Virus record (IMG/VR): IMGVR_UViG_3300034072_000758
Span: 1-64,000 of that record
DNA length: 64,000 bases
Strand: one strand, 5' to 3'
A program made the translations under genes and the position numbers. This document shows positions 9,388 through 62,255 of this stretch, piece after piece. The notes below the pieces were generated by a model. The model was not told where the DNA came from. It made no database searches and saw only the letters and a program-made list of their open reading frames with translations. Within the stretch, counting starts at the first letter, position 1. Every line of letters starts with the position of its first letter.

Positions 9388-10707
9388 TTACATCACGAAT
9401 ATTTTGCCTTCGCATTCATTTAAAGCCGCATTGAAATTATCTTCGAGTTCTTCCGCCATGTCGGTAAGAGCATTGTTGTAATATTCATAATCGTGCTCGT
9501 TACCACGAAAGCTATAATAACCATTTTGACCGGCCTTAAAATGCTTCGGAAGTGGATTGAATTTGATCTTACCAGTCAACATATATTGGGCTAATAGCTC
9601 AAGAGTAAATTCAAATTCATTTCTGAGCGCAGCTTCTCTTGCCGATCTCATAGTCCCAATGTTCTGAAAGAAGTATTTTAGGATTTTGTCAGTATTAGCT
9701 TTTTTCTGATGCTCACCATATCGTCCGCTATTGTTGTGTCTTTCTTCGCTATTACCTACCTTTACGCCATAGTTTTCTAAAATATTATTCATATATCGGA
9801 ATATTATGTTTCTAACTTCCGTGAAATGATAAACTTGTCTTTGGCTTTGACCGGTAGTGAAATTGTATTTGCCGTAGCGTGAAATTGCGTGACCGAAACG
9901 GTGAGCGATAATCCAAGCTGTCATAGGAACCTTTTCATCGCCCTTGTTGCTGTTGAACAAGATGTTGATAGCATTTGGTTGATACTGGAACTCGGACAAA
10001 GCTTTCGGCATGTTTTGTTCCAGCCACTCTTGATCGACCATACCAATTTCGCTATTTCGATTAGCTTCCGGCGAATTGACGAAATACATGTTGTAGTTAT
10101 GTGGTGTTTTAGCCCACTTCGCCTTGATCTTCTCAACGGCTTTTGGGTTATTCAAGAGCTTGCGTTCATTATCCTTATAAGAACTGTTCTTATCCCAATT
10201 ACCTACCTTCTGGAAATTGGCAATTGGCATTTCTTCAAGGGTCTCTTCACCTTCGGTCAATGAGGCCATCAGTTCCTTTACAGTAGGTTCATCCATATAC
10301 CCAAAGTGCGGCATTTTCAGTCCACGAATTTTAGTCTTCTCGGTGGCACCGTTGCTCATGAAAGCCTTGATACACTGGAAAGCGTCATCTGATTTTGGAC
10401 CCATACCATCAATCGGCGGAGCGAAATGAATCACGCCATTTCGGTATCGCCCACCAACACCTACCCAACCTCTGATCCAGCTATCATACCCGGCATTCGA
10501 TCCTGTTACTTCAAAATATTCCTCAGCATGAGACGCGCTAAGGGTCTTTGTACCGGCAGTACCTTCGTCGCCCAAAATGAAGCGTCCAGTCTTAGCATTG
10601 AACATAAAGCGACGATTTTTGATTTGTTTAAAATCAAAGCGACGAGTCTGGTGGGCCTTGTCAGATAGGCTGGTTTCGTTTTCATTAAGAATTTCAAAGT
10701 AACGCAT
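9388..10707 (-). CDS. Multidomain late protein with CTS-like N-terminus
   Basis: MRYFEILNE start; internal LTE/LEE linker; HRFGH motif; TAAATA 5 nt before ATG. Confidence 0.75.
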   Translation of the reverse strand: MRYFEILNENETSLSDKAHQTRRFDFKQIKNRRFMFNAKTGRFILGDEGTAGTKTLSASHAEEYFEVTGSNAGYDSWIRGWVGVGGRYRNGVIHFAPPIDGMGPKSDDAFQCIKAFMSNGATEKTKIRGLKMPHFGYMDEPTVKELMASLTEGEETLEEMPIANFQKVGNWDKNSSYKDNERKLLNNPKAVEKIKAKWAKTPHNYNMYFVNSPEANRNSEIGMVDQEWLEQNMPKALSEFQYQPNAINILFNSNKGDEKVPMTAWIIAHRFGHAISRYGKYNFTTGQSQRQVYHFTEVRNIIFRYMNNILENYGVKVGNSEERHNNSGRYGEHQKKANTDKILKYFFQNIGTMRSAREAALRNEFEFTLELLAQYMLTGKIKFNPLPKHFKAGQNGYYSFRGNEHDYEYYNNALTDMAEELEDNFNAALNECEGKIFVM

Positions 10708-10712
10708 AAGAT

Positions 10713-10728
10713 TATTTATTACTAAATA
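10713..10728. promoter_or_regulatory. Back-to-back T4-type late promoters (TAAATA)
   Basis: TAAATA at 10718-10713 (minus) and 10723-10728 (plus), each exactly 5 nt from an ATG. Confidence 0.75.
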
Positions 10729-10733
10729 CGTGT

Positions 10734-11306
10734 ATGAAGTTTAGAGAATTGTTAGAACCTAAGAAGAGAATTTATATTGCTCGAAAACTACTTAATGGTG
10801 AAGACATCATTGCTTGGGCTAAGGAAAACGGTCTAACATATTGTTTAAAACCGGAAGATTTTCACACAACAATTTTCTATACAAAGAACGCTATTGACTG
10901 GTATGATGTAGAACGCCAGAATGATACGGTGGTATGTAATACCGATGGGACAGATCGTCACATTACTTTGCTAGGTAAAACTGCGTTGTGTTTAGTATTC
11001 AAAAATGAAATACTTGATAATCGTCATTTCCAACTTCGACATGATGGCTTAATTTCAACGTATAACGACCATATTTTACACGTGACTCTCTCATACCGGG
11101 AGTATGATCAGCCCCTCAACATCATGACTGTTCCGGTATATAGTGGGCCTCTAATCTTTGGTCCTGAGTATGTTGATAATCCCGACGAAGATAACGTTGA
11201 ATTTGAAGAAATGTGTCTCGATGAAAGTGAAACACAGGATTGTGAACTTGGTCCCTATTATCAAAGCGACGAAGAATTAGAAGCTCAAGGTGTAAAAAAG
11301 CTCTAA
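10734..11306 (+). CDS. acb1: Anti-CBASS Acb1-like (T4 gp57B-like) 2H phosphoesterase
   Basis: Two HxT motifs (FHTTIFY, LHVTLSY); IYIARK, LCLVFKNEILDNRH and PLIFGPEY align by eye with T4 gp57B. Confidence 0.8.
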   Translation: MKFRELLEPKKRIYIARKLLNGEDIIAWAKENGLTYCLKPEDFHTTIFYTKNAIDWYDVERQNDTVVCNTDGTDRHITLLGKTALCLVFKNEILDNRHFQLRHDGLISTYNDHILHVTLSYREYDQPLNIMTVPVYSGPLIFGPEYVDNPDEDNVEFEEMCLDESETQDCELGPYYQSDEELEAQGVKKL

Positions 11307-11312
11307 TATAGA

Positions 11313-11340
11313 TTGACAATATACCGTCATATGTTATCGT
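11313..11340 (+). promoter_or_regulatory. Sigma70-type early promoter
   Basis: TTGACA...TG-T-TATCGT upstream of GGAG-acaaaat-ATG. Confidence 0.6.
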
Positions 11341-11370
11341 GAAATATATCAATATTCACGGAGACAAAAT

Positions 11371-11721
11371 ATGACCGGTCTGACTATTCTCGCTAAAACC
11401 ATCGTTGTAGCTTTCAAGGAAGGCCGCAAGCGTTATGAAGTAGCCCGCCCGGTCACGGCGACGGTCGCGGATGATGCCTCACTTCGCGCATCCACCATCA
11501 GCCTGATCTCGGCTGGACAAAACGGCAGCATGGTCAACTGGAACGTCCGCGAAGCTACTCTGGCCGAAGTTCTGGCCCTTGCCGCGCAGTCGGCTCGCAA
11601 TTTTCTACTGACGCTCGGCGAAGAAAACGGAAAGTTCACGGTCGAAGACGATGGTGAAGTGCTATTCATCACCGACACCGAAACCACCCGATCCGAGGTA
11701 TTGGCTAAGGTATTCAAGTAA
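11371..11721 (+). CDS. Early hypothetical protein
   Basis: Own promoter and SD. Confidence 0.7.
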   Translation: MTGLTILAKTIVVAFKEGRKRYEVARPVTATVADDASLRASTISLISAGQNGSMVNWNVREATLAEVLALAAQSARNFLLTLGEENGKFTVEDDGEVLFITDTETTRSEVLAKVFK

Positions 11722-12172
11722 GCAATAACCGCATCATCATCGTGGCATTGGTGATTTCTTCCCAAGATGCGTTGATCCTAGCGGTATATCCGGTCATAGA
11801 TTCTATTTTGACCCATCGTTTGTAAGGGAGAACACCACCGCGTTCTCCCTTTATTTCGTAATACCCCTCCCCCATTTCTTGAATTGAAAAACTAGACACG
11901 AGGTCAAATTTGATCTCGAACTTTACATGTTGGAACACAACGCTCAAATAGGCGTCTGAAACCGTGGCCTTACCCTTGTCGTCGTTCACAAATCTGTTTC
12001 CGCGCCCGTGTATCAAAGAAAACACGACCGTTTTACCGGCTTCATATTCCAATGATATAATATCATCGCATCGTGCTTCTGCCTGATTGTACAGAATAAA
12101 CCAGTCGAGCAACGGTAACCCACATTCTAATATTTGCTCAGTCCGGTCGTCGCTCATAGCATAATTCTCCAA
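11714..12172 (-). CDS. Hypothetical protein (true start probably a few codons downstream)
   Basis: TTGACC-17-TAAAAT promoter upstream; GGAG SD. Confidence 0.6.
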   Translation of the reverse strand: MENYAMSDDRTEQILECGLPLLDWFILYNQAEARCDDIISLEYEAGKTVVFSLIHGRGNRFVNDDKGKATVSDAYLSVVFQHVKFEIKFDLVSSFSIQEMGEGYYEIKGERGGVLPYKRWVKIESMTGYTARINASWEEITNATMMMRLLLT

Positions 12173-12250
12173 GAAAATAGATTTTACGACCAGAAAAGAA
12201 TCTGGTCAACACCTCAACATTAATTTCGACTCTCGCATCTTTGGTATGTT

Positions 12251-13354: not shown

Positions 13355-13419
13355 TTCAGGACTTTTTACCTTCTAAATATGAGTCCTCAAAAATAAGAAA
13401 GTATAGGAAAGAGTATAAT

Positions 13420-14733: not shown

Positions 14734-14736
14734 ATC

Positions 14737-14766: not shown

Positions 14767-14779
14767 GCTAAATATTAAC

Positions 14780-15088
14780 ATGGAATTTAATAGCGAAATG
14801 CGCGATTATATGGCTATCGCGCAGTTATATTCTTGGGATTATATGGATGCTGTTCATTTTGAAAAAGAACAGTTGACTGAATCTGCGCAAGTGGAGACGG
14901 AAAACCCATCAGTAATCGGAGAATACGCTGTTGGTGAATTGAAGGATTTGGTTTTTAAACTCAGAGCATTTCAAGAATCTCAAAGTGGTGACTATGGCTA
15001 TGGCTTTGAAATGGGGATGCAACGAGCGGCTGATATGGTTGAAAATTTAATTCTAAGATTAAGTGAAGAGAACGATGGACAGAAGTAA
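14780..15088 (+). CDS. Late hypothetical protein, first gene of a probable virion operon
   Basis: TAAATA at 14769-14774, 5 nt before ATG 14780. Confidence 0.7.
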   Translation: MEFNSEMRDYMAIAQLYSWDYMDAVHFEKEQLTESAQVETENPSVIGEYAVGELKDLVFKLRAFQESQSGDYGYGFEMGMQRAADMVENLILRLSEENDGQK

Positions 15089-17142: not shown

Positions 17143-17183
17143 TTTGAATAAATATTATACAAACAAATAAGAGGGTTACTTTT

Positions 17184-17495
17184 ATGGGTCACGCCATTAT
17201 TTCTAATATGGATAGCTATGATTATTTCATCGTGAATACAAACGTTGATATTACTAATACTACGGTTGTTTCCAACGGCAAGACTAACTTTGACCGAATG
17301 GTTGAAATTATCAACATTCATAGCCAACCAGTTTTGATGTCGGCCATAACCGGTTCTGGTCCGTATACGTTCAAGTTCGCGGTCGAACACAAAGGCTTCC
17401 ACAAACCATCTGATATTCAGAACTCGTTCGTTCTTCACGGCGCGTCTTTTGGCTTCAACACAAACACGGTGGTTACACAAGCTTCGGGGCTGTAA
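17184..17495 (+). CDS. Small late protein, possibly structural
   Basis: TAAATA at 17149-17154, GAGGG SD; FKFAVEH motif. Confidence 0.7.
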   Translation: MGHAIISNMDSYDYFIVNTNVDITNTTVVSNGKTNFDRMVEIINIHSQPVLMSAITGSGPYTFKFAVEHKGFHKPSDIQNSFVLHGASFGFNTNTVVTQASGL

Positions 17496-23225: not shown

Positions 23226-23516
23226 TCATTCTTCTTCGTTTACGACTTCAAAAGCCGTAAATTTCACCACGGTGAATTTATCGGTTTTGAAAATCTTGTT
23301 AAGGCGGTCACGTAGATTAAATGCGTGGCCGCTATTTGCGAAAGAAACCTTCTTATACTTCGGACCCGGATAGTCGTACAAGCTGTGGAGAGTCCTCAAA
23401 TTAATTGGCTTCCCGTCATGGTATACCGCATAAATAGACTCGGCCTTAAGCACTTGCTCAGACTTATACGTCTTTGTGTCTGTAAAGTTTAGGATAATTT
23501 CGGGCTTCGGTCTCAT
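23226..23516 (-). CDS. Late hypothetical protein
   Basis: MRPKP start 5 nt after TAAATA (23527-23522); PGPKYKKVSF motif. Confidence 0.75.
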   Translation of the reverse strand: MRPKPEIILNFTDTKTYKSEQVLKAESIYAVYHDGKPINLRTLHSLYDYPGPKYKKVSFANSGHAFNLRDRLNKIFKTDKFTVVKFTAFEVVNEEE

Positions 23517-23576
23517 ACAAATATTTATCAATTTACTTGACTTTACACCCTAATTAAAGTAGGTGTTTATAAATCT

Positions 23577-28205: not shown

Positions 28206-28398
28206 ATAACCCTCTGTGAAGGCGTAGAGCCTCCTTCCAGTCATATGGTTTAGGAACCGGACGTACCGGAACAGGAACCCCGCGCTTGCGAAGCTCAAAC
28301 GCCGCCGCCTCGCTGGACAGCGACTTAGCCATCCAGAAATCGAGAAGTTCTTTTGTAGACTTTGTGGCCATCTTTGTGGCGCGTTTTGAAATAGACAT
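28204..28398 (-). CDS. Small basic protein (64 aa)
   Basis: GGGAG SD then ATG 28398 (MSISKRATK...). Confidence 0.5.
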   Translation of the reverse strand: MSISKRATKMATKSTKELLDFWMAKSLSSEAAAFELRKRGVPVPVRPVPKPYDWKEALRLHRGL

Positions 28399-28511
28399 AA
28401 CTATTCTCCCATGAACGGACAAATTTCCACGGGATTGTGAATTTAAATTCATCCGTCCAAGTTTGACGGAGTTAAGCTGTGTCTGCTGCCTTAGCCATGC
28501 TTTTATTTATA
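28399..28511 (-). promoter_or_regulatory. Late promoter plus structured 5' leader containing an 8-codon uORF
   Basis: TATAAATA at 28511-28504, ATG 28498 (MAKAADTA*), three hairpins, the last covering the SD. Confidence 0.5.
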
Positions 28512-29817: not shown

Positions 29818-30169
29818 ACAACACTTCGTCATCCTCTTCATCGAAGAAGATTTTAACTTGGAAGTCGGGACCGGTATCTGTTCTTATGGTATAGCTGCCC
29901 GAACAGTTACTCATACACCAATCTTCTAGTATTGCTTCGGATAAGCAATACAAATCCTCTCTAATGAAGCGTTTATGATCAAACACAACCATGCTAATAT
30001 TTATTGACATGAGTGTGAAACATGGTACAACGGCCTCATGACCAAAGCTCTCGCATATTTTATCACCAATGACGGGATCATTACCCACGTAACGGGTGAT
30101 ATTGACACGGCCTTGCTTAACGAATGGTTCACCCATTATAAAATCGCGGGCGGTTTCATGAAATTTCAC
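29795..30169 (-). CDS. Hypothetical protein (FxxxxDxxxFxL family); start uncertain
   Basis: WCMSNCSG...IFFDEEDDEVLFIL. Confidence 0.6.
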   Translation of the reverse strand: MKFHETARDFIMGEPFVKQGRVNITRYVGNDPVIGDKICESFGHEAVVPCFTLMSINISMVVFDHKRFIREDLYCLSEAILEDWCMSNCSGSYTIRTDTGPDFQVKIFFDEEDDEVLFILGPLY

Positions 30170-30354: not shown

Positions 30355-30567
30355 TTAACGGTGGCGATAAACAATCCGCCCCTTGGTAAAATCGTGGATA
30401 CTCATTTCGATGTCTACCACATCACCCTGAGATACCCGAATATTATTTCGTTTTATTTTTCCACTTAGATGGCACATGACTTCGTGGCCATTTTCAAGCT
30501 TTACGCGGAACAGGCTAGGTAATAGCTCTGAGACCGTCCCTTTTATTTTTATGATGTCCTTTTCCAA
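30355..30567 (-). CDS. infA: Translation initiation factor IF-1
   Basis: FRVKLENGH, HLSGK, GDVV and KGRIVYR motifs; TAAATA upstream. Confidence 0.95.
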   Translation of the reverse strand: MEKDIIKIKGTVSELLPSLFRVKLENGHEVMCHLSGKIKRNNIRVSQGDVVDIEMSIHDFTKGRIVYRHR

Positions 30568-30683
30568 AAAGTTCCTCTGATTGGTTTACGAGATATTTAT
30601 TTTATCTCAGTTTTAAATTGACTTTGACGCGAAGTTATCGCTATGGTCATGTTAACCATGTCACCTAGCGTTAGAGTAAGCGT

Positions 30684-41900: not shown

Positions 41901-44900
41901 ATAGGTTACACGAGGATTAGTATATATTTCATCCACGATTTGATTGTTAATAACAAGATATGTATTCTTTTCAGACTTCGATAGAACAATCGAATTAGCC
42001 CCAGCTAATAATACTGGCGCAGATAGCGTAACTACTCCCTTAGATTCGAAAATCAATTCATTATTGACGCGCTTTAACTTAAAGCCATCAGCATCACCAT
42101 ATGTGAACAAGGTACAATCGGTAGCATCGTATGTCCCAACAACGATCTCTATTGTAAACTCTTCTTGAAGAGATACATCCCCAGAAACCCACAGATTGTT
42201 AAAGTTCAAAGCATAATTGCCATTACCTTGAGAAACGTAGCTCACAACCCCATGAGTAGTGAGCGTATTCGCGCCTGTCCCTTGGTTGTTTACATTATTA
42301 TTAAAATCGGCGTGATGTGTTATGTCGTAGAAGAAACGATCAGCCTCAATATTCGGCGGTGTAGATGGCAACATCCAAGTATCGTTTTTGGTGAACACAT
42401 ATTCGTCAATAACGCCGTGGAACGGATTATTACCCGCGACCGATCCAGCACCAATTACGGCGTTTGTTGTGCCACTGAATACTGGATATGTCGATACGAT
42501 TGTGCCGATGTACATACCGTCAATAGCCATGCTATAATTGGTATTCGAACCCGTCGCCCCCGGATTGTGATTGATGATCGAGACATGATACCATTCGCCA
42601 ACACGAATGATATTCGACATGATCTGAGACGGGCCATCGGTTAGAACAAAACGATCATTGGCGTAGAAACATTCCATGTTTCCACACTTGAAAAGGGTTT
42701 GAACTCCGCTATTTGATGTAGGTTTAACGAAACATTCTATACCGTAGTTCTCAAAACCTTGAACTCGCGTGACTTCGTGATAACCCCAAAGAGTTCCGTC
42801 CAAAATCGCCCCATTACCAAATTTACCACTGTCGAAATCAGCAGGAGTCAAAGCGCGCGACGGTGTAAGCGAACCTGTCGTAATCATATTGGCCGCAGGT
42901 AAATTCGGCGCATATACATCGACTTCTACACCGTTAAAATCACCGTCGAATGGGATATACTGATGAATGTATTCACCCTTATAAAGACCGAAAGCAATAT
43001 TCTCCGGGGAACCCGAACGATCTGTAAGAACTATCTTTGGTGTAAAGCCGGAACCATACACGCCATTCAAGTCATTGAATACCACACCAGTTTGAATGAC
43101 GTTGTTACCGTTGTTCTGGTAAAAATTACCCGTGCTTTGATCTATGGTGGTCCATGTTGGTGTGACGTTCTTGTAGACCGTGAACGTGAACTCTCTGTCT
43201 GTATAACGGATTGTGTTCGAAGCACGAATTGTAAATGTATACACAGTGTCTTCGTCAACCGTTTCAGCAATACCACTTAGCTTACCAGTAGACGACAGCG
43301 TGAAATTAGGCGGCAATACTCCACCCACAACGGTATAATTGATGCTTGGAGCATTACCAGCGCCAACCGCTTGAAGCTGTGTGGTGAAATACATATTCTG
43401 GACTCTTCCAAACGAACTCGGTCCCTGCCAGATTGGTGCTTGAAGGAAACGAGCGATCACTCGAAAAGACATAGGCGTCTTATAATAAAAACCCTCAGTG
43501 ATGCTTTCACTATGATCATACGCTTGAAGTGTAAATTCAATGATCTGATCTTGAGCAACTTGCGGGTATGTTCCGTAAATACGCCCAGCACCTTGATCTA
43601 TCATAATTCTGTTGCTATTAGATTCGTAAAGTATACTTGATGACTCTGAATAGAAGTATTCAACGATTTGACCATCAAGGTCCACAGCCTCAACGTATGG
43701 CTCGAATGCTGCGTTAGCGAAGGCGTATCCGATTGGTGTTTGCTCCCAACCGGACGCCAAAACAATTATGTTATCGATATGGTATGTGAATGGCTTTTCG
43801 GCTACGCCAGCCGGGTTTTGCGCTGTAACATAGAACTTATGTTCCGATGTAAAATACTCAGCATCATTGGTTGGATTTTTCTTAACAGACCCGGCTATGA
43901 TCGCCACGTTTGTCATCGGATCATCGAGAAGCATGGTGTAAATCTGATGATAAACCGGGGACTGCGTTGGATCGGCCAGTGTCGCATAATAGTCATCTTG
44001 GTGACCGAAGAAATCCAGACCTGACTTAGCCAATTCCGAAGAGGTATTGCTGTTCAGGAAATAGCTGGTCGCGTTTGACGCATATATCATTAGGGTCACG
44101 TCTTCGGCTAGACCGAAATGTCCAGCGGTAGTTCCCAAAACAGAAGGCGATTGCCACACTGGCGTAGAAACAGGCGATGGTCCCGGCGTAATCGGCGCGG
44201 CAGAATAATCACTACCCAATGTCGTATTATCTATAGTATCGCGCCAAACCGGCGCATTGTTATACTTGTTGGTTATCGAGAATGTTCTTACTACGCGATG
44301 ATTCGGAACTTCCACACCACCATTATCTACATCATAGATACCGATGTCGAATGTATAAGTTTCTTCCCAATTAGGAGAGTTGTTGGCGTCGTTAGGGAAC
44401 TTTCCAGAAATACCATTTCCGGTTAATATAAGCTCACTGAATACCGGAAGATTACCTCTATCTGCTATGTAGTAGACAAGACCTTGGTTAGTGTTCTTTG
44501 ACGTACCCACGAAGGTATGATTGAACTCGACCATACCCAAATGCGTACCCAAATTACCGGCTGGTGTGATCCACTCTGGCATCAAATCTTTTTCAATTGT
44601 GAAGAAATACTCTTGGCTTGTTGATAGAACACCATCGGTCGCATCGACCGTGAAGTAACAAGTTTCAGTATTCGCTCCCGGCGTTGTCAGATACCAAGCT
44701 TCGCCGCTAACAACACCGGAGAACGGATCAATTGTCGTGTTGATAGCCGAATTACTCAGTGTATAGATTATTGGTTTAAACTGAGGATCATGGGCTTCAA
44801 TCGTGAATGTGAAACTAAAGCCTTCTACGACATTACCCAAATTGATCGCTGGTGTATCAAAGATCGGTGGGGTATTGAGCCACGACACGAATTGATAATC

Positions 44901-46394
44901 TCGTGAAGACGTATGAACGCCATCAAAAGCTGTTACTGTAACGTTGGTAATGACATCTGCACCGTTATTTGCCGGGGGTAGCTTTCCTACAAACGTGCCG
45001 TCCGAGTAATCAAAGGTAATCTCGGATGGGAGAGGCGTGACGGTGTAGATCAATGGCTTACCATTCGGGTCTTGTGCGATAGGCTCTGGGATACCGACCA
45101 GCGTTGTGTTTCCCAAATCCTGAAACAAGACGGTGTTGCCATTGAATACTGGTGGTAAATCTTTTTCGTTTGTAATTAGAACAGCGAGGTCCGCCGATTT
45201 TATACCGTTCGTCGCCGAAATCGTAAAATCAATCGGGAAAAATTGTGGTTCTTCGGCATCAACCGGATATGGCGACATCGTGCCACTCAGTTCATTCGTG
45301 ACCGTGTTATAAACAATTTCTGGATAGTCTTCGAGGCCACTAACAGTGTAGGTATATGGGATCGGTGTATATGTAGACGAAACGATTTGTGTAGTCGTTA
45401 GTGTCGTGTTTTCCAGATATGTCCCCAGATCAAGCGCCCCACCGACTACACCATCAAAGGTTGGTATTTGAACATATTCAACTCTGATCTTGAACAGACG
45501 CGGGGTCGTATAGAGATCGGTTCTAGCACCAGCAATGACCGTGTAAGTCGTCGTATCGGGCACCATAGGGGCGATACCCGATGTATACCCGGTGGTGTTT
45601 TCGATTAGAATGCCATCTGGCAAAGAACCCGCCAGAATGACATATTCTATGGGTAGAGAACCCGGATCGGCAGCGAGTAATTGCGCGTCCCAGAAAAGTG
45701 TTTCGATAGCTGTATTACCTAGATTACCAGCCGGGGTAATCCATTTTGGCGCATACTCTGGTGGAACAACGGTGAGATAAAGCGCAAATTGTCTCGTTGC
45801 GGCAGAAGAGAGGTTCGATGCGGAAACGATGAATGTATAAATTTGATCTATTTCGACATTGATAGGAGTACCATAAATCTCTCCGGTATCCGTATTCAGG
45901 AACAAACCGGGTGGGAGACTTCCACCGACTAAGGTGTAAAATACCGGAAGATCGAGTTCATCTTCGGCCAAAAGATTATAGGTGAACGGCATATTGGTAT
46001 AAGCCATCGCATCCAAAATACCCGAAGGCGTGACCCATACAGGTGCGGGGACTTCCCCAACAACCATTCGTAATTGTTTTGTTATGCTGACCGAAGCGCT
46101 TGCGGCTTTAACAACGAACGTGTAAACACCGTCAGCACCAGTGATCGTGCCGGTGATTGTCCCACCCGGATTGACAGTCAAACCAGCCGGAAGAATACCA
46201 CTTTCAAAAGTATAAATGATTGGGAGACCGGTTGTTGTCTCCGCTTTCAGAGCTATATTCACGGTTTTAGACGGACGATACATGGAGCCATATGGCCCAA
46301 GCGTCTTTGTAGGAGATACCCACCAGATAGTTGGCGAACCTGATTTATTGAGTGTCAAGTTGCCACGCAACTTGAGTTCCGACAGTCTAAGCAT
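39000..46394 (-). CDS. Giant Ig-like repeat protein with LamG-like domains and Gly-rich C-terminus (fibre/adhesin)
   Basis: Many P-x-W-x-T...LG / YS...GxLP / GxISG / YTFxVxA repeats; WYHV and FHGVIDE LamG motifs; GGGG-rich C-terminal domain; TAAATA 4 nt before ATG. Confidence 0.85.
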   Translation of the reverse strand: MLRLSELKLRGNLTLNKSGSPTIWWVSPTKTLGPYGSMYRPSKTVNIALKAETTTGLPIIYTFESGILPAGLTVNPGGTITGTITGADGVYTFVVKAASASVSITKQLRMVVGEVPAPVWVTPSGILDAMAYTNMPFTYNLLAEDELDLPVFYTLVGGSLPPGLFLNTDTGEIYGTPINVEIDQIYTFIVSASNLSSAATRQFALYLTVVPPEYAPKWITPAGNLGNTAIETLFWDAQLLAADPGSLPIEYVILAGSLPDGILIENTTGYTSGIAPMVPDTTTYTVIAGARTDLYTTPRLFKIRVEYVQIPTFDGVVGGALDLGTYLENTTLTTTQIVSSTYTPIPYTYTVSGLEDYPEIVYNTVTNELSGTMSPYPVDAEEPQFFPIDFTISATNGIKSADLAVLITNEKDLPPVFNGNTVLFQDLGNTTLVGIPEPIAQDPNGKPLIYTVTPLPSEITFDYSDGTFVGKLPPANNGADVITNVTVTAFDGVHTSSRDYQFVSWLNTPPIFDTPAINLGNVVEGFSFTFTIEAHDPQFKPIIYTLSNSAINTTIDPFSGVVSGEAWYLTTPGANTETCYFTVDATDGVLSTSQEYFFTIEKDLMPEWITPAGNLGTHLGMVEFNHTFVGTSKNTNQGLVYYIADRGNLPVFSELILTGNGISGKFPNDANNSPNWEETYTFDIGIYDVDNGGVEVPNHRVVRTFSITNKYNNAPVWRDTIDNTTLGSDYSAAPITPGPSPVSTPVWQSPSVLGTTAGHFGLAEDVTLMIYASNATSYFLNSNTSSELAKSGLDFFGHQDDYYATLADPTQSPVYHQIYTMLLDDPMTNVAIIAGSVKKNPTNDAEYFTSEHKFYVTAQNPAGVAEKPFTYHIDNIIVLASGWEQTPIGYAFANAAFEPYVEAVDLDGQIVEYFYSESSSILYESNSNRIMIDQGAGRIYGTYPQVAQDQIIEFTLQAYDHSESITEGFYYKTPMSFRVIARFLQAPIWQGPSSFGRVQNMYFTTQLQAVGAGNAPSINYTVVGGVLPPNFTLSSTGKLSGIAETVDEDTVYTFTIRASNTIRYTDREFTFTVYKNVTPTWTTIDQSTGNFYQNNGNNVIQTGVVFNDLNGVYGSGFTPKIVLTDRSGSPENIAFGLYKGEYIHQYIPFDGDFNGVEVDVYAPNLPAANMITTGSLTPSRALTPADFDSGKFGNGAILDGTLWGYHEVTRVQGFENYGIECFVKPTSNSGVQTLFKCGNMECFYANDRFVLTDGPSQIMSNIIRVGEWYHVSIINHNPGATGSNTNYSMAIDGMYIGTIVSTYPVFSGTTNAVIGAGSVAGNNPFHGVIDEYVFTKNDTWMLPSTPPNIEADRFFYDITHHADFNNNVNNQGTGANTLTTHGVVSYVSQGNGNYALNFNNLWVSGDVSLQEEFTIEIVVGTYDATDCTLFTYGDADGFKLKRVNNELIFESKGVVTLSAPVLLAGANSIVLSKSEKNTYLVINNQIVDEIYTNPRVTYTGNSFTLGSDIGGTNKLFGLVDSFTITNGVSKFRKSFQPYDNPRSDLITGQVKGFFPLEQNDTVYTFKATVSDHLATSEERTFSMLNLKDVDPYFNTNPNLGEWIERYSVATGVSAGDVERYPVVYSIVGGNFPSSLTFDTTTGGISGTAPLVNGSLTRYEFTVQADDSNHVTTRDFFIDVEEDYVPVWQTPNSVTLAQVFGGDSFSATVQATDQNLSQTLVYANAGGSWPPDSTVSTGGQISGTIPVSAVTANYSPIISVTDGNAVVNSTFLIEVIQNQPPVFQTPGYTIFDSWEQTIQLDSDTDSPIVINIVEPNNTTMTLDIASPDWVVISNVINANGLSQIYISNVTFPAVENDTEFYLDVTADDSVLSASERYTFKVKFNSAPIWQNAAYLGEVQESSAFMKTMVATSNGLPVYYSIDSTDMVDVHIDAISGMLTWVSPPVFVDTVYSVTLNASTGIKFTKQTFTIMVRRNWPPVWQTGSNLGTYLENRAVNFTLLATDPNGHQVNYSPSAGTTIPPFLTANYAAAGNTATFDGVTQFVGNDTVYSFTIGALDDYHLVEREFTFTVLYTPAPQWITPAGHLGNLVENEPVNIQIQATSNAAFLPLTYSTVGSWPNNLTLLSNGVISGSVQSGLYANGTVLTLTARVEDIDGRANTRTFTANVVAADMMTVTSPTGVVTTYKANSKIIMNAAGEWKLRAHQNLSFPTKLWGGGGGGWHGGVGGFANGTVTVTANTAMTVWVGGGGVTGTFSLGRQGGFGGGGYCGPSYGPGYFAGSGGGLSGIFISNSTPIQANAIIIAAGGGGAIDVDGGNGGGLTGVAGGFRNGQQLQGGGGTQLAGGTASTAAGATPTPGGALYGGNGAVNISSRSGGGGGGGYFGGGGGGSGSGSQVSAGSGGGGGSSYIASPYLSNGTTVIGVGYVPPMTSDVDYISNAAASGAYMGVTGNGNGIVSANGLVVIIIP

Positions 46395-46410
46395 CTAGTA
46401 TTTATTAAAC

Positions 46411-47867: not shown

Positions 47868-48143
47868 TTATTTTCTTACGATGATATATTTTACGCGCGG
47901 TTTGTCATCATTATGAAAATATGTATAATTTCCATAGTGATCCAGTGCGCCATATCTGAAATCGTAACATATTTCATTAAGTTCTTTTATGATCTCGAAT
48001 GGAGCATCTATATTAATTTCGACAGTACCGCCTCCCAGAGAATACCAACGGTGTATCTCATAAGGATATTGAGGATACTTGTCTGCCAGCAATTTTTTTA
48101 GCTCGCTGACGACTTCGATAGTTTTATCGATATTTCTGGACAC
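47868..48143 (-). CDS. Hypothetical protein
   Basis: GTG 4 nt after TAAATA; YSLGGG motif. Confidence 0.55.
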   Translation of the reverse strand: MSRNIDKTIEVVSELKKLLADKYPQYPYEIHRWYSLGGGTVEINIDAPFEIIKELNEICYDFRYGALDHYGNYTYFHNDDKPRVKYIIVRK

Positions 48144-48224
48144 AAAATATTTAGGCCAGATACATTGACTAAATCCAAGTTTGTGTTAGTATCAATATAC
48201 AAAATATTTAATGGAGATTGATCT

Positions 48225-54506: not shown

Positions 54507-54509
54507 TTT

Positions 54510-56237: not shown

Positions 56238-56303
56238 TGTTTAATCCTCGATTTACCAAATTTTAGAGCATTTATCCGTCCGAGTCAATGAATAAATATC
56301 ATT

Positions 56304-57080
56304 ATGACGGCCTCATTAACTCTTTATCAGACACCAAGAGTAGTCACATTGTCTTTAGCGGAAGGTATTCTCATGCATTACCCAATAAATCATACTGCCT
56401 TCAAGATCACAAAAGGAATTACGACTGAAATTCTTTTCTTTATTAAAAACATTGACAATGTTCCGGTGACTACACTTGTCGGTACGCCAAAGATTATCAT
56501 CAATACTCAAAATAATGAGATCGAAATTCTTCAAAAGGACTTCGAACTGGTCAACGCTGAGAAGTCTTTGTGGAAGATCGTGTTCACACCACAAGAAATG
56601 GAATCCATTCCTCTGGGCGGATATATCTATTTTGTCGTGGTTAATAATGCGGGCGTAGAGACCTTCCTGTACACCGACAAGGCATACGGTGCCACTGGAA
56701 CGCTGGAAGCCGTCACAGGGCCTTACGCAGCCCCACAGGGGCCTGTTATCGTCCAGCGCCGCGACATGCTCTGGGACAACGGTATTGTCGTCTCTGGCTC
56801 TTATAAAAGCGCCGAAAATCCATATCAAACCGGCAATCATGTCATCAACACTTCGATCACCGAGTTCACCGGTAATATCTACGTGGAAGCATCAACTTTC
56901 GATCAACCGTCTCAAAATCACGTTGATTGGGAAAAAGTACACACCGTCGAAGTCACCGAAGCTACAAGCAACGCGATTGAAATATCATTACCATCGGCGG
57001 GATATAAGTGGCTACGCTTCTCTGCTAAAGAGAAAACAGGTAACGTAGTTACGTTCTCATACAGTAGATACATGGAATAA
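56304..57080 (+). CDS. Late beta-rich protein, probably structural
   Basis: TAAATA 5 nt before ATG; FTGNIYVEAS...W and WLRF motifs. Confidence 0.7.
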   Translation: MTASLTLYQTPRVVTLSLAEGILMHYPINHTAFKITKGITTEILFFIKNIDNVPVTTLVGTPKIIINTQNNEIEILQKDFELVNAEKSLWKIVFTPQEMESIPLGGYIYFVVVNNAGVETFLYTDKAYGATGTLEAVTGPYAAPQGPVIVQRRDMLWDNGIVVSGSYKSAENPYQTGNHVINTSITEFTGNIYVEASTFDQPSQNHVDWEKVHTVEVTEATSNAIEISLPSAGYKWLRFSAKEKTGNVVTFSYSRYME

Positions 57081-57081
57081 T

Positions 57082-57549: not shown

Positions 57550-57573
57550 TTAAAACCGCATATAAATATCGGT

Positions 57574-58101
57574 ATGGGAAAACGATCCGATTTTGAACGC
57601 AATGAGCGCGACTTCTACGAAACGCCTCTGGAAGGCGTAAAGCCTCTACTGGTCCACTTAGAACCAAACACCAAATTTGTAGAGCCTTGCGGTGGTAAAG
57701 GTAAGCTTATAGACCATCTGGTGTCATTTGGTCATGAGTGTGTCGGAGCTTATGATGTTCATCCGCTGAGAGACGATATTTTGGTTGGTGATGCCACGAC
57801 CGTTCAACATGTCGGGGAAAATTTTGTCTTCATCACTAACCCACCTTGGGATCGCAAGCTTCTTCACCCGATGATCGAGAACCTGTCTGATCAGGCTCCC
57901 ACTTGGTTACTATTTGATGCTGATTGGCTTCACACAAAGCAGTCTATCCCGTTCTTACCACGCCTTAGAAAGGTAGTATCTATAGGACGCTTGAAGTGGA
58001 TACCAGATAGCAAGATGACAGGTAAGGACAATTGCGCTTGGTATCTCTTTGAGAAGCCTTCCTCAGAACATCTTCCCATCTTCTATGGTCGAACCCTCTA
58101 A
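57574..58101 (+). CDS. Amino-DNA methyltransferase (N6-adenine type)
   Basis: DFYETP, EPCGGKG (motif I) and ITNPPW (motif IV); TATAAATA 5 nt before ATG. Confidence 0.85.
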   Translation: MGKRSDFERNERDFYETPLEGVKPLLVHLEPNTKFVEPCGGKGKLIDHLVSFGHECVGAYDVHPLRDDILVGDATTVQHVGENFVFITNPPWDRKLLHPMIENLSDQAPTWLLFDADWLHTKQSIPFLPRLRKVVSIGRLKWIPDSKMTGKDNCAWYLFEKPSSEHLPIFYGRTL

Positions 58102-58383: not shown

Positions 58384-58405
58384 GAATAAAGTATATCAAA
58401 AACCA

Positions 58406-58807: not shown

Positions 58808-58889
58808 ATCCCAAAAGTTGCCTATTTTCTCGTATATGTCAATATGTGGATTTTATTAAAATATGTTTTTTAAAACAATAAATAAAACT

Positions 58890-59258
58890 ATGGATGATGA
58901 AATAACCAAGATCATTGAAAAGTATCCTTTTTTGAGCTATGGGAAAATGCTCGATGAAGAATACTTGGGGATCATTCAAAATTCAGATAACCAGATGCTC
59001 TCGATGTATTGTCTCAATTACATGCCGGTGGAGTTGCGCAAGCAATTCTTGAAATATGGCGAGGAATGGTGGTGGGAGAGTAATCGATCTGTACCAATTA
59101 ATATTTTCATTAAAGATCGATTCAAAGTATATCGCCCCTATCTGAAACATTTCAATAGAAAAGATTTCGATCTACAATGCGGATACGCACTATCTCTCCA
59201 AGAAGCTATAGCAAAACGTGTGCGCACCAAGCAAGTTATTCTTGTGAAGAACATTTAA
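58890..59258 (+). CDS. Late hypothetical protein
   Basis: TAAATA at 58879-58884, 5 nt before ATG; KYPFLS and WWWESNR motifs. Confidence 0.75.
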   Translation: MDDEITKIIEKYPFLSYGKMLDEEYLGIIQNSDNQMLSMYCLNYMPVELRKQFLKYGEEWWWESNRSVPINIFIKDRFKVYRPYLKHFNRKDFDLQCGYALSLQEAIAKRVRTKQVILVKNI

Positions 59259-59376
59259 ATCGAATCGAGCTAAAGCATACGTCAATTCTTCCTCGCGGAA
59301 TTTAGCCAGAGCCGCAACATATCTATAACGTTCCATAAAATCAGGTTCGAATTTGTAAGTGTTATAAAGTAGTTTT

Positions 59377-59661
59377 TCAAGTATGAGTGATCTGGACATT
59401 ATCAAAATCAAAAATAAGAGCTAAGTTATCGAATATATTGTTGTGAGTGTCGAGTATCCAAGTAACATCCGCGTCTCTGTCTTGAAACTTAGCCAAATTC
59501 TCTATATAGCTCCGTTCATGCGGATCAAGAAATTTAAGCCGTGACAGCACCCTATTTTTGCTTTGGGTGATATATATTTTATTCATTGACATCACCTTGG
59601 AGTGGTTCAAAAAGTCGATGATGCTGTTTGAGGAAAAACACTCGGTCCATTTCAACATCAT
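59377..59661 (-). CDS. Hypothetical protein; start uncertain
   Basis: Part of an overlapping minus-strand run; NLAKF motif shared with neighbours. Confidence 0.45.
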   Translation of the reverse strand: MMLKWTECFSSNSIIDFLNHSKVMSMNKIYITQSKNRVLSRLKFLDPHERSYIENLAKFQDRDADVTWILDTHNNIFDNLALIFDFDNVQITHT

Positions 59662-59779
59662 TAAAGCGAGCTAGATTTACAATGGATGAATACACATATG
59701 GAAATATATCCCCATAGGCCCCTTCGCAAGCATAAATCACAACACCTGCTAGAAATTCTTCTTCGGTTTCTTGTATCAT
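59579..59779 (-). CDS. Hypothetical protein
   Basis: ATGA overlap with the upstream gene; NLARF motif. Confidence 0.55.
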   Translation of the reverse strand: MIQETEEEFLAGVVIYACEGAYGDIFPYVYSSIVNLARFNDVEMDRVFFLKQHHRLFEPLQGDVNE

Positions 59780-60567
59780 TGACCCTCATCCGAGTCATAC
59801 GTATCTGGTATCAAATCCATGATCACTAATGTTTCAGCTTCAATCTTGGCGATACCCTCTGGCGTCTTCAAATAATCCATCGCGTCTAAAACAGGCCCGA
59901 AACTGGAAAAATTCTCGTCAGGGACATATACGCTGAAATACACGCGATCCTTCGCTATTGTTCTAGCGCGTTGTTCCTTAGAAGGGAAACAGGACAGCAG
60001 TTCGTCGGGCGATACGTAATGGTGCTCATAATACGGTAGGGTTAGATTGATCTCGAAACCAGTCCCGCCATATGTGCCGTTCGTGTTCGCAAAAATACCG
60101 TTCCATACTCTTTTGCGAGCACTCCATTCTTTTTTAGAAACATTTTCGGGGCAGTCAGTGCTATCCCACCATCCGAACCAAGTAATTTTGTCGGAGGATT
60201 CAATAATGACATTAAGTAAATCCTCTCGTTCAACAATTGGAAACAAATAGAAGTTTCGCTTGTAAGGATAAAGCAAAAGTTTTACTTCGAAATCAATTCG
60301 AGAATCACGATAGCCGGTAACCTTTTGTTCTTTATAATCATTTCGGAACTCGGTTCTGTATTCTGAGCATTCATTTCGAAGAGAACATTCTTCCCCGTCA
60401 ATGAACTTGCGGTCCAATCGGCGTGAGACGGTTTCTGCCATTTGTATGGCGAATAGTTCCTTGGTCTTATCACCGACAACTTTCCGAAGCGCGACCATAT
60501 GATCGTTTAGCTCGAAAATATTCATATCGATTTTGTGGCCTTGGCCCATTCGGATAGACATTATCAC
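59776..60567 (-). CDS. Hypothetical protein
   Basis: WWDSTDCPENVSKKEWSARKRVW motif; TTGACT promoter. Confidence 0.7.
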   Translation of the reverse strand: MIMSIRMGQGHKIDMNIFELNDHMVALRKVVGDKTKELFAIQMAETVSRRLDRKFIDGEECSLRNECSEYRTEFRNDYKEQKVTGYRDSRIDFEVKLLLYPYKRNFYLFPIVEREDLLNVIIESSDKITWFGWWDSTDCPENVSKKEWSARKRVWNGIFANTNGTYGGTGFEINLTLPYYEHHYVSPDELLSCFPSKEQRARTIAKDRVYFSVYVPDENFSSFGPVLDAMDYLKTPEGIAKIEAETLVIMDLIPDTYDSDEGQ

Positions 60568-60656
60568 GCGCTCTTTTTTGATCTCAAAACGCAGTTAATC
60601 AAACTTTCCTTTATAAGTCAAATTATTAAAACCGGCCATTATTACTAAATAATATA

Positions 60657-62255
60657 ATGGACAATCCAGAAGTTGTAAAAAAACCGTATCTTAAGACTAA
60701 AATGACATTAGAACAATGTCATGAATTGGTTCGTTGTACGCACGACTATATTCACTTCATTAAGAATTACGTAAAGATTCAGCACCCGACAGACGGTGTT
60801 GTTCCTTTTGAACCATTTCCATTTCAGTATCGTTTATTTGATAGTTTCGCGCAGAATCGATTCACTATTGCGCTTACAGCACGTCAGATGGGCAAGACGA
60901 CTGTGGCCGCTGCGTTCCTTCTTTGGAAAGCTATGTTTGTGCCTAACTTCAAAATCCTAATCGTGGCCAACACTTACAAACAAGCGTTAGAAATTATGGA
61001 CCGCGTTCGCTTCGCTTATGAGAATCTACCAGATTTTATCCGATGCGGAGCGACTGAATACAATAAGGGTACTGTTACGTTCGACAACGGTTCCCAAATT
61101 ACATCCCGCGCCACTGGCCCAAACTCAACCCGTGGTCTTTCGATCTCGATGTTGTATTGTGACGAGTTCGCGTTCGTTAGCCCGCGTATCGCGGATGACT
61201 TCTGGACATCGGCCCGTCCGGTTCTGGCGACCGGGGGTGGTTGCGTAATCACTTCGACGCCAAAGAACGACGAAGATAAATTCGCACAAATCTGGCGTCA
61301 GGCGCTCGACATATACGATGATAACGGCAATCCAAACGATACTGGATTGGGGAAGAACGGTTTCAAGGCCGTGAAGATCACGTGGGATGAACACCCACTA
61401 CGTGATGAAGAATGGGCCAAGAAAGAGCGCGCCGCCATCGGCGAACAGAAGTTTCTACAGGAATATAATTGTGAGTTCGTATCGGACGACGAAACGTTGG
61501 TCAATTCGATTGTGCTATCTCAGCTTCGAGGACGCGAGCCAGAGTTTTATACGACTACGGTTCGGTGGTTCAAGGAGCCTGAGCCTAACAAGACCTACCT
61601 CGTGGCTCTTGACCCTTGTACGGGGTCTGGGGGCGACCACGCGGCTATTGAGGTCTTCGAGGTAGGCGGTAAAACCGTCAACCAGATTGCCGAATGGCAG
61701 CACAATTTGACCCCGGCGCGGGGTCAGGTAGCATTGCTCATGAATATTTTGAAATTCTTATATAGCAGCCTTCACGATCACCCGGACCAAGAAGGTGACC
61801 CGGAAATCTTCTGGACCTTTGAGAACAACAGCATAGGCGATTCCATTCTTCAAGTTATAGAAGATACCGGAGAAGAAAACTTTCCCGGCATACTTTTGAA
61901 CGAAAAGAAGAAGAAGGGTCAAGTGAAACGAAACAAGCGCGGTCTTTTGACAGACAACCGCCGAAAGCTCGCTGGATGTAACCGCTTAAAATCACTGATT
62001 GAGTCGGCACGTATGACCATCAATAGTAAAAAGCTCCTTAAGGAGTTAAAGAACTTTGTAGCATCAGGCGCATCATATAAGGCGAAGCCGGGTGAGCATG
62101 ATGATCTGGTCATGGGGACTGTCCTGATCGCCAGAATGTTGGACTTGGTGGTCAACTATTCGTTGAACAACATGGATGATCTTAAAGAAGCTATCAACGA
62201 GGACGATGAAGAAGATGCGGGCGGCGGGGATGACCTGTTGCCGGTACTGGTGTAA
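60657..62255 (+). CDS. terL: Terminase large subunit (T4 gp17-like)
   Basis: ARQMGKT Walker A; YCDEFAFV Walker B; TSTP; QEYNCEF; LDP; HDDLVM. Confidence 0.96.
   Translation: MDNPEVVKKPYLKTKMTLEQCHELVRCTHDYIHFIKNYVKIQHPTDGVVPFEPFPFQYRLFDSFAQNRFTIALTARQMGKTTVAAAFLLWKAMFVPNFKILIVANTYKQALEIMDRVRFAYENLPDFIRCGATEYNKGTVTFDNGSQITSRATGPNSTRGLSISMLYCDEFAFVSPRIADDFWTSARPVLATGGGCVITSTPKNDEDKFAQIWRQALDIYDDNGNPNDTGLGKNGFKAVKITWDEHPLRDEEWAKKERAAIGEQKFLQEYNCEFVSDDETLVNSIVLSQLRGREPEFYTTTVRWFKEPEPNKTYLVALDPCTGSGGDHAAIEVFEVGGKTVNQIAEWQHNLTPARGQVALLMNILKFLYSSLHDHPDQEGDPEIFWTFENNSIGDSILQVIEDTGEENFPGILLNEKKKKGQVKRNKRGLLTDNRRKLAGCNRLKSLIESARMTINSKKLLKELKNFVASGASYKAKPGEHDDLVMGTVLIARMLDLVVNYSLNNMDDLKEAINEDDEEDAGGGDDLLPVLV

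What the first reader, a model, noticed from the sequence alone, without database searches (positions are those of the whole stretch)
10707..60659. Late genes appear to be transcribed as leaderless mRNAs (TAAATA-N5-ATG)
Seen: TAAATA lies exactly 5 nt before the start codon, leaving no room for an SD, at 10707(-), 10734(+), 14780(+), 23516(-), 28498(-), 56304(+), 57574(+), 58890(+) and 60657(+, terminase). It lies 4 nt before at 46394(-) and 48143(-). The 26-nt gap 10708-10733 holds two such promoters back to back. Known: the T4 late promoter TATAAATA spans about -13 to -6, which would put +1 on the A of ATG. Other late genes (13420, 17184, 30567) keep leaders with an SD. Inference: a two-tier late translation programme, possibly insensitive to shut-off of SD-led initiation and linked to the phage-encoded IF-1.
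Basis: partly seen in the sequence, partly recalled or inferred. Interest (0 to 1): 0.75.

Follow-up and report, generated by a model that had tools for sequence, protein, structure and literature searches.

The report
Late promoters fused to start codons
In this 517-kb uncultivated T4-related giant phage, about 58 late (virion and packaged-protein) genes have the T4-type late promoter box TAAATA exactly 4-5 bases before their ATG, so their mRNAs should start at the start codon with no ribosome-binding leader, whereas the same genes in related phages keep a normal leader.

Summary
TAAATA-N5-ATG occurs 10 times in the window (0.66 expected) and 56 times in the 516,805-bp genome (4.7 expected). 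Of my 705 gene calls, 58 start 4-5 nt after TAAATA. None has a Shine-Dalgarno sequence and 57 of 58 start with ATG.

The distance from TAAATA to the gene start is bimodal: 4-5 nt (58 genes), none at 7-15 nt, and about 55 genes at 16-40 nt with an SD. This fits a promoter whose start site lies about 5 nt downstream, giving either no leader or one long enough for an SD.

The phage encodes a gp55-type late sigma factor. The sites lack a -35 element, prefer a pyrimidine at -1, sit mostly at divergent junctions, and precede terminase, baseplate, fibre, adaptor and virion proteins and probable capsid-targeted proteins.

Orthologues in Atu_ph07 and PA5oct carry the same box 19-38 nt upstream with a leader. 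T4, Atu_ph07, PA5oct and CBB show no 5-nt peak.

No transcription start site could be mapped, so "leaderless" remains a strong inference. The proposed link to phage IF-1 and to shut-off resistance is untested. I class this as a new variant of known things: T4-type late promoters, and the leaderless phage mRNAs known from Thermus phages.

The parts
10705..10718 (-). TAAATA-N5-ATG; start of a 439-aa protein beginning MRYFEILNE (capsid-targeting-like N-terminus)
   Evidence: first start codon of the ORF, no SD
10723..10736 (+). TAAATA-N5-ATG; start of a 190-aa Acb1 homologue beginning MKFRELLEP; back to back with the previous site (26 nt between the two ATGs)
   Evidence: Pfam PF23474 Acb1 E=5e-23
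14769..14782 (+). TAAATA-N5-ATG directly after a terminator-like hairpin; 102-aa ORF
23514..23527 (-). TAAATA-N5-ATG; 96-aa ORF. Orthologues in Atu_ph07 and PA5oct have the box 31 and 27 nt upstream.
28496..28509 (-). TATAAATA-N5-ATG that opens only an 8-codon ORF (MAKAADTA*). Probably a late promoter for a leadered transcript of the next gene, or a mini-ORF.
29990..30003 (-).
46392..46404 (-). TAAATA-N4-ATG just after a terminator hairpin; start of a 2464-aa protein with Ig-like (He_PIG) repeats
   Evidence: Pfam He_PIG E=4e-48
48141..48153 (-). TAAATA-N4-GTG; 91-aa ORF. The only non-ATG member of the class.
56293..56306 (+). TAAATA-N5-ATG; 258-aa protein of unknown function
57563..57576 (+). 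TATAAATA-N5-ATG; 175-aa protein like a DNA methyltransferase
   Evidence: phrog_799 E=5e-30
58879..58892 (+). TAAATA-N5-ATG; 122-aa protein. Orthologues in Atu_ph07 and PA5oct have the box 33 and 19 nt upstream.
60646..60659 (+). TAAATA-N5-ATG; start of the large terminase (532 aa, 60657-62255)
   Evidence: The same arrangement precedes terL in metagenomic relatives L055, L056, L057 and L063. In Atu_ph07 the box is 31 nt upstream.
17149..17186 (+). Leadered late-type arrangement: ATAAATA, then a 29-nt leader with SD (AGAGGG), then ATG at 17184
30355..30599 (-). IF-1 gene (TTG start at 30567) preceded by ATAAATA (30594-30600) and a 26-nt leader with SD GAGGA
   Evidence: PF01176 E=1.6e-20; sequence

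Best explanation
TAAATA (usually ATAAATA or CTAAATA, sometimes TATAAATA) is the -10-type box of this phage's late promoters. It is read by host RNA polymerase carrying the phage's gp55-type late sigma factor. As in T4, transcription should begin about 6 nt after the last A of the box.

At about 58 genes the box sits 5 nt (45 genes) or 4 nt (13 genes) before the start codon. The transcript should therefore begin at the A of AUG and be translated as a leaderless mRNA, through recognition of a 5'-terminal AUG rather than an SD. About 55 other genes have the same box 16-40 nt upstream and an ordinary SD leader. These include the tail sheath, the portal and the major-capsid operon.

Shown here: the motif, its spacing statistics, the sigma factor gene, the gene functions, and the leadered state of the orthologues. 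Inferred: the exact transcription start site and the mode of translation. A further inference is that the leaderless set, mostly lower-copy virion parts, terminase and packaged proteins, is a separately tuned expression class.
For: Excess and sharpness of the motif:
- 56 TAAATA-N5-ATG in the genome against 4.7 expected. 50 of them open ORFs of at least 60 aa.
- One-mismatch variants are not enriched at this spacing.
- The distance from TAAATA to the gene start is bimodal: 58 genes at 4-5 nt, none at 7-15 nt, about 55 at 16-40 nt, mostly with an SD.

Properties of the class:
- 0 of 58 have an SD; 45% of the other genes have one at their first candidate start, against 13% at random ATGs.
- 57 of 58 start with ATG, against 80% of strongly SD-led genes.
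- Position -1 is a pyrimidine in 41 of 45 N5 sites, with A at +1.
- 0 of 58 have a -35-like hexamer.
- The first 35 nt are less structured: -1.8 against -3.3 kcal/mol, p = 3e-5.

Promoter-like placement:
- 37 of 58 have a divergent upstream neighbour, against 161 of 646 other genes (p = 5e-9).
- Seven genes lie in back-to-back pairs with only 21-28 nt between the two ATGs. Several sites follow terminator hairpins.
- TAAATA is about ten-fold denser in intergenic DNA: 195 of 318 copies lie in 14% of the genome. It is depleted inside genes in both orientations (55 against 97, and 58 against 99).

Machinery:
- A gp55-type late sigma is encoded at genome 307850-308638(-): phrog_12791 E=6e-76, phrog_234 E=7e-18. 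It aligns to the sigma-2-like segment of T4 gp55.
- In T4 the first base of the 8-bp box is at -13, so 5 nt separate the box from +1 (PMC2988020).

Late functions of the class: terminase, five virion structural proteins, tail fibres, two baseplate wedge proteins, a head-tail adaptor, and ART-PolyVal proteins with T4-like capsid-targeting N-termini.

Comparative evidence:
- In 9 of 11 Atu_ph07 orthologues and 7 of 10 PA5oct orthologues with aligned N-termini, the same box lies 19-38 nt upstream with an SD-like leader.
- T4, Atu_ph07, PA5oct and CBB have no peak at 5 nt.
Against: - No transcript 5' end was observed. The one read-laying run on RNA libraries gave only short, low-depth contigs of relatives and no start-site information.
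- The start site of the gp55-type holoenzyme is assumed to follow T4 geometry.
- Homologues of the T4 co-activator gp33 and the clamp gp45 were not detected, so the initiation complex may differ from T4's.
- In the 13 N4 sites the start must shift by one base.
- Some leadered TAAATA sites precede DNA polymerase and RNR genes, so the box is not exclusive to morphogenesis genes, or some copies are chance.
- The host is unknown, so how well it translates leaderless mRNA is unknown.
- The gene calls and start choices come from my own heuristic.
Confidence: 0.75

Rival explanations
1. TAAATA-N5-ATG is a non-SD translation initiation signal, for example an A/U-rich enhancer or protein-binding site, inside longer leadered or polycistronic mRNAs, and not a promoter at these sites.
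For: The class has no SD, so some other ribosome recruitment signal is needed. 21 of 58 sites lie 3-46 nt behind a co-directional gene, where read-through transcripts are likely to exist as well.
Against: The word is identical to the late-promoter box found 16-40 nt upstream of SD-led late genes in the same genome, and upstream of the orthologues in Atu_ph07 and PA5oct. A1-mismatch copies are not enriched at this spacing, which is unlike known A/U-rich enhancers. The empty 7-15 nt zone, the enrichment at divergent junctions (p = 5e-9), the back-to-back pairs 21-28 nt apart and the pyrimidine at -1 are promoter properties.
Confidence: 0.07
2. The box is a late promoter, but the leaderless class exists to serve a dedicated late translation programme. 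Phage IF-1, and perhaps phage bS21 and tRNA-CAT genes, would bias ribosomes towards 5'-terminal AUGs, or keep these mRNAs translated when SD-led initiation is shut off. It adds to the best explanation rather than excluding it.
For: IF-1 is encoded at 30355-30567(-) behind a leadered ATAAATA box, so it is probably co-expressed late. bS21 is encoded at genome 501044-501199(-), and there are three tRNA-CAT genes. No IF3 domain was found. A review states that IF1 and IF2 enhance leaderless translation, that excess IF3 inhibits it, and that extra initiator tRNA strongly enhances it (PMC9031893). Thermus phages are reported to have mostly leaderless transcripts (bioRxiv 10.64898/2026.04.20.719267).
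Against: Nothing here tests function. The most abundant late proteins (capsid operon, sheath, portal) are SD-led, so SD-led initiation cannot be shut off late. IF-1, bS21 and tRNAs are common in huge phages whatever their promoter layout (my knowledge, not tested here). A simpler reading is that lack of an SD just sets a lower or different translation rate for low-copy proteins.
Confidence: 0.15
3. The excess comes from duplication of a few genes together with their upstream regions (paralogue families), not from independent selection at each site.
For: Many members share N-terminal peptides (MRYFE..., MSNWY...), and a few small paralogue groups exist.
Against: All-against-all BLASTP links only a handful of class members. 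Sequences upstream of the box differ between sites. The class includes unrelated conserved genes (terminase, baseplate, adaptor, fibres) whose orthologues in other phages carry the box at another distance.
Confidence: 0.02
4. The motif marks an RNA processing site where longer transcripts are cut to leave a 5'-terminal AUG.
For: Processing could also yield leaderless mRNAs. PMC2988020 warns that primer extension cannot tell initiation from processing.
Against: This does not explain the identity with the gp55 box, the absence of any other promoter in the 21-28-nt divergent gaps, or the same box at leadered genes. No candidate nuclease was looked for.
Confidence: 0.02

Closest known systems
T4 late promoters (TATAAATA, gp55/gp33/gp45-dependent)
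   Same: Same core box, no -35 element, A/T-rich G-poor segment after the box, a gp55-type sigma encoded, placement before virion genes on either strand.
   Different: In T4 the distance from box to ATG peaks at 25-29 nt and no TATAAATA copy has an ORF-opening ATG at 5 nt. Here 58 genes have 4-5 nt. The first two positions of the box are looser (A/C/T then TAAATA). gp33 and gp45 homologues were not detected.
ATAAATA late motif of Rak2-like jumbo phages (CBB, GAP32) and of Atu_ph07 and PA5oct
   Same: Closest relatives by terminase (44-52% identity). An ATAAATA motif before structural genes and a gp55-like sigma, without detectable gp33 or gp45, were already described for CBB and GAP32 (PMC5259590). 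Orthologous genes carry the box.
   Different: In those phages the box lies 19-38 nt upstream with a leader. TAAATA-N5-ATG is at background level: Atu_ph07 15 against 9 control, PA5oct 15 against 12, CBB 4 against 10, Phosso 3 against 2.
Leaderless transcripts of Thermus phages (YS40, Lalka27a) and single cases such as lambda cI
   Same: [quoted passage not shown] In the Thermus phages this holds for most transcripts.
   Different: Different hosts, where leaderless mRNAs are common, and different promoter elements and factors (for example TAGGGT late -10 in Lalka27a). Those cases are mapped experimentally; here the start site is inferred. In this phage only about half of the late promoters are of this type.

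Membership tests
T4-type (gp55) late promoter | TATAAATA-like box about one helical turn upstream of +1 | tested here: met
   The TAAATA core is invariant. The extended consensus is aATAAATA, and 13 of the sites are full TATAAATA. The position relative to +1 could not be measured.
T4-type (gp55) late promoter | No conserved -35 element | tested here: met
   0 of 58 sites have TTGACA (up to 1 mismatch) at 16-18 bp; there is no information content upstream of -13.
T4-type (gp55) late promoter | Phage encodes a gp55-family sigma factor | tested here: met
   Genome 307850-308638(-): phrog_12791 E=6e-76 and phrog_234 E=7e-18; BLASTP against T4 gp55 residues 40-110, E=2e-6.
T4-type (gp55) late promoter | Co-activator gp33 and sliding clamp gp45 | tested here: inconclusive
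   phmmer and tblastn with T4 gp33 and gp45 found nothing significant. Pfam gp45-slide_C gave no match. A gp44 clamp-loader homologue is present at 359244-360170, E=1.6e-20. Both proteins are small or divergent. The same absence is reported for CBB (PMC5259590).
T4-type (gp55) late promoter | Precedes late (morphogenesis) genes | tested here: met
   Terminase, virion structural proteins, fibres, baseplate, adaptor, sheath, portal and the capsid operon. Exceptions are DNA polymerase, RNR and the helicase, each with a leadered box.
Leaderless mRNA | Transcript 5' end at, or within a few nt of, the start codon | not testable with these tools
   No RNA data for this phage. Read laying on four RNA libraries gave only 151-281-nt contigs of relatives. 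The claim is inferred from T4 promoter geometry and the spacing statistics.
Leaderless mRNA | No SD or other leader signal | tested here: met
   0 of 58 have an SD-like word; only 4-5 nt separate the box from the start codon.
Leaderless mRNA | Strong preference for AUG and an unstructured 5' end | tested here: met
   57 of 58 start with ATG, against 80% of strongly SD-led genes. Mean MFE of +1..+35 is -1.8 against -3.3 kcal/mol, p = 3e-5.

The most novel reading that the evidence does not exclude
The phage runs two parallel late translation channels from one promoter type: SD-led for bulk structural proteins and leaderless for about 58 low-copy virion, packaging and injected proteins. It would actively tune the leaderless channel with its own IF-1, bS21 and possibly an initiator-like tRNA. 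That would be a virus-encoded switch of initiation mode in a T4-type phage.
Probability: 0.15. Interest if true: 0.85.

Novelty: new variant of a known kind. Interest (0 to 1): 0.62.

Why it matters
T4-type late transcription is a textbook system, and its mRNAs are leadered. Here the same promoter appears to have been moved flush against the start codon at more than half of the late transcription units of a 517-kb phage. The orthologues in cultured relatives keep leaders.

If confirmed, this is a natural large-scale conversion from SD-led to leaderless expression within one phage lineage. It offers matched leadered and leaderless orthologue pairs for studying what leaderless initiation buys a virus, and a reason to ask why huge phages carry IF-1 and bS21. 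It also helps annotation: in this clade TAAATA-N4/5-ATG marks true start codons, which SD-based gene callers would misplace.

Tried and rejected
- RNA evidence. Two run searches found the genome only in DNA metagenomes, plus traces of relatives in RNA libraries. Laying X7-X10 on genome 323001-329000 gave a few short low-depth contigs and no 5'-end information.
- Close relatives for phylogenetic footprinting. Megablast against phages found nothing. IMG/VR and metagenome scans with TerL gave at most 57% identity. Some of these loci share the N5 arrangement at terL, but the contigs are short.
- One-mismatch variants of the box at N5 are not enriched, so the class is not larger than about 60 genes.
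- gp33 and gp45 were searched for and not found.
- Paralogue duplication as the source of the excess was rejected.
- Initiator identity of the three tRNA-CAT genes was looked at by eye only and left unresolved.
- The host was not inferred.
- Literature: no paper in the library holds both 'TATAAATA' and 'leaderless'. The PA5oct transcriptome paper reports only sigma70-like promoters.
Full report
**What the window is.** The window is the first 64 kb of a single 516,805-bp contig (45% G+C) with short direct terminal repeats, judged complete. It was found in subsurface and soil metagenomes.

Its large terminase is 52% identical to that of Agrobacterium phage Atu_ph07 and Sinorhizobium phage Phosso. 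It is 47% identical to that of Pseudomonas phage PA5oct and 43-45% to the Rak2-like phages GAP32 and CBB. The phage therefore belongs to the T4-superfamily jumbo and huge phages. It encodes:
- a Gp23-type major capsid protein;
- a gp21-type prohead protease;
- a gp44-like clamp loader;
- RIIA and RIIB;
- 57 tRNAs;
- IF-1;
- bS21.

**Check of the observation.** In the window TAAATA-N5-ATG occurs 10 times against 0.66 expected. In the genome it occurs 56 times against 4.7 +/- 2.1 expected. Spacings 0-15 otherwise give 3-9 each, except N4 with 16.

Of the 56 sites, 50 open an ORF of at least 60 aa. A hexamer scan that assumes no motif finds only two signals upstream of first start codons: SD-like words (TAGGAG, AGGAGA) at -12 to -14, and TAAATA at -11 (30 observed, 0.22 expected).

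One listed site, 28498(-), opens only an 8-codon ORF. One further site, 29992(-), was missed.

**Gene-level picture.** With a simple ORF and codon-usage gene caller I obtained 705 genes covering 87% of the genome. Fifty-eight start 4 nt (13 genes) or 5 nt (45 genes) after TAAATA. In 41 of them this is the first possible start of the ORF.
- None has an SD-like word. By comparison, 45% of the other genes have one at their first candidate start, and 13% of random ATGs do.
- 57 of 58 start with ATG, against 80% of strongly SD-led genes.
- Position -1 is T or C in 41 of 45 N5 sites, followed by A. This is the usual pyrimidine-purine start-site context.
- No site has a -35-like hexamer.
- The first 35 nt are less structured than in other genes, -1.8 against -3.3 kcal/mol, p = 3e-5.

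**The key pattern.** The distance from the nearest upstream TAAATA to the gene start is bimodal. There are 58 genes at 4-5 nt, none at 7-15 nt, and about 55 spread over 16-40 nt, nearly all with an SD between box and start.

This is what a promoter that starts about 5 nt downstream of the box predicts. The mRNA either has no leader, or has one long enough to hold an SD. A translational enhancer would not leave such a gap.

One-mismatch copies of the box are not enriched at N5, in line with the tight consensus of T4 late promoters (PMC2988020).

**Promoter-like placement.**
- 37 of 58 class members have a divergently oriented upstream neighbour, against 161 of 646 other genes (odds ratio 5.3, p = 5e-9).
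- Several pairs are back to back with only 21-28 nt between the two ATGs: 10707/10734, 99985/100014, 225596/225618 and 262878/262901. That leaves no room for any other promoter outside coding sequence.
- Several sites directly follow terminator-like hairpins, for example 14780 and 46394.
- TAAATA is about ten times denser in intergenic DNA than in genes.
- Inside genes it is depleted to 0.57-0.59 of the synonymous-shuffle expectation in both orientations. Two of eight control hexamers were also depleted, to about 0.7.

**Machinery.** Genome 307850-308638(-) encodes a 262-aa protein matching PHROG families for the late sigma factor (E=6e-76 and 7e-18). It aligns to the sigma-2-like core of T4 gp55.

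In T4 the 8-bp box begins at -13, so it ends at -6 and 5 nt separate it from +1 (PMC2988020). This is exactly the N5 spacing seen here. gp33 and gp45 homologues were not detected, as already reported for CBB (PMC5259590).

**Are these late genes?** The class includes the following:
- the terminase;
- five proteins of 'virion structural' PHROGs;
- tail fibre and collar proteins;
- two baseplate wedge proteins;
- a head-tail adaptor;
- a 2464-aa Ig-repeat protein.

About twenty more members begin with peptides such as MRYFEILNE, MRYHEIISE, MKFRELLEP or MSNWYRNLINLLE. These share the Y-x-x-[F/I/L]-[I/L/M]-x-E pattern of the T4 internal proteins, whose ORFs start MKTYQEFIAE. A crude pattern is 17-fold enriched in the class, and four members carry ART-PolyVal domains.

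With a gp21-type protease present, these are probably capsid-targeted, injected proteins, which must be made late. A DNA methyltransferase-like gene and an Acb1 homologue also belong to the class.

The leadered boxes precede the tail sheath, the portal, a long tail fibre and the scaffold/capsid operon. They also precede DNA polymerase and an RNR subunit.

**Comparative evidence.** T4 shows TATAAATA-to-ATG distances peaking at 25-29 nt and none at 5 nt. Atu_ph07 peaks at 20-34 nt. PA5oct, CBB and Phosso show no excess at N5.

The orthologues of the class members in Atu_ph07 (9 of 11 with aligned N-termini, counting terL) and PA5oct (7 of 10) carry the same box 19-38 nt upstream, followed by an SD-like leader. 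The promoter is therefore conserved with the gene, and the leader is what is missing in this genome.

The N5 arrangement also precedes terL and one or two other genes in short metagenomic contigs whose TerL is 45-49% identical. So it is not unique to this genome, although it is most developed here.

**Interpretation.** The best explanation is that these are gp55-type late promoters placed so that +1 is the A of AUG, giving leaderless late mRNAs. I put confidence at about 0.75. The main gap is the lack of any mapped 5' end.

- In favour, the IF-1 gene has a leadered ATAAATA box. bS21 and three tRNA-CAT genes are present and no IF3 domain was found. IF1 is said to stimulate leaderless translation in vitro (PMC9031893).
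- Against, the bulk structural proteins are SD-led, so SD-led initiation must stay active late.
- A simpler reading is that the leaderless layout sets a distinct, probably lower, translation rate for low-copy virion parts, terminase and injected proteins.

**Relation to what is known.** ATAAATA late motifs and gp55-like sigmas in Rak2-like phages are published (PMC5259590). Leaderless phage transcripts are known for Thermus phages YS40 and Lalka27a and for single genes such as lambda cI. The phiKZ early dRNA-seq map found no leaderless phage transcript, and AR9 transcripts have 26-491-nt UTRs. I found no paper combining the T4 late box with leaderless mRNAs.

I therefore class this as a new variant of a known kind. 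It is of moderate to high interest and directly testable.

Noticed in passing
genome-wide; in the window 9388-10707(-) and 10734-11306(+): About 20 proteins begin with MRYFEILNE-, MKFRELLE- or MSNWYRNLINLLE-type peptides. These resemble the T4 capsid-targeting sequence MKTYQEFIAE with its L/I-x-E protease site. Four carry ART-PolyVal domains, and a gp21-type protease lies at genome 323908-324354. They are probably a large set of packaged, injected proteins.
   Followed up: partly
window 10734-11306 (+): An Acb1 (anti-CBASS) homologue, Pfam PF23474 E=5e-23, has a capsid-targeting-like N-terminus and a leaderless-type start. The counter-defence enzyme might be delivered with the DNA.
   Followed up: no
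genome 117291-117364 (+) (L008:17291-17364): A tRNA with anticodon CTA (amber suppressor type) is among 57 tRNA genes. TAG is the rarest stop in my gene calls (80 of 705). Whether any genes are read through TAG was not tested.
   Followed up: no
genome 501044-501199 (-) (L028:1044-1199); window 30355-30567 (-): The phage encodes ribosomal protein bS21 (PF01165, E=5e-18) as well as IF-1. No IF3 C-domain was found. The bS21 gene lies downstream of a gene with a leadered TAAATA box.
   Followed up: partly
window 28397-28509 (-): A full TATAAATA-N5-ATG opens only an 8-codon ORF (MAKAADTA*), followed by an SD-led small gene. It is either a leaderless mini-ORF or a leadered late transcript that happens to begin with AUG.
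   Followed up: partly
intergenic regions upstream of many class members, e.g. window 56270-56292 and 23528-23550: TGTCAA or GTCAAT, the reverse complement of a TTGACA -35 element, often lies at variable distance just upstream of the late box at divergent junctions. It is probably the sigma70-type promoter of the oppositely oriented early gene. Seen in the listing and not quantified.
   Followed up: no
window 39000-46394 (-): A 2464-aa protein has six He_PIG Ig-like repeats, a laminin-G-like domain and an ALK/LTK glycine-rich domain. It has three paralogues, including one of about 3755 aa at genome 76305-87572.
   Followed up: no
L019:3001-9000 (genome 323001-329000): RNA-type libraries of two coded organisms and a plant metatranscriptome contain short contigs 90-97% identical to the capsid and scaffold genes. 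Close relatives of this phage therefore occur in quite different sample types.
   Followed up: no
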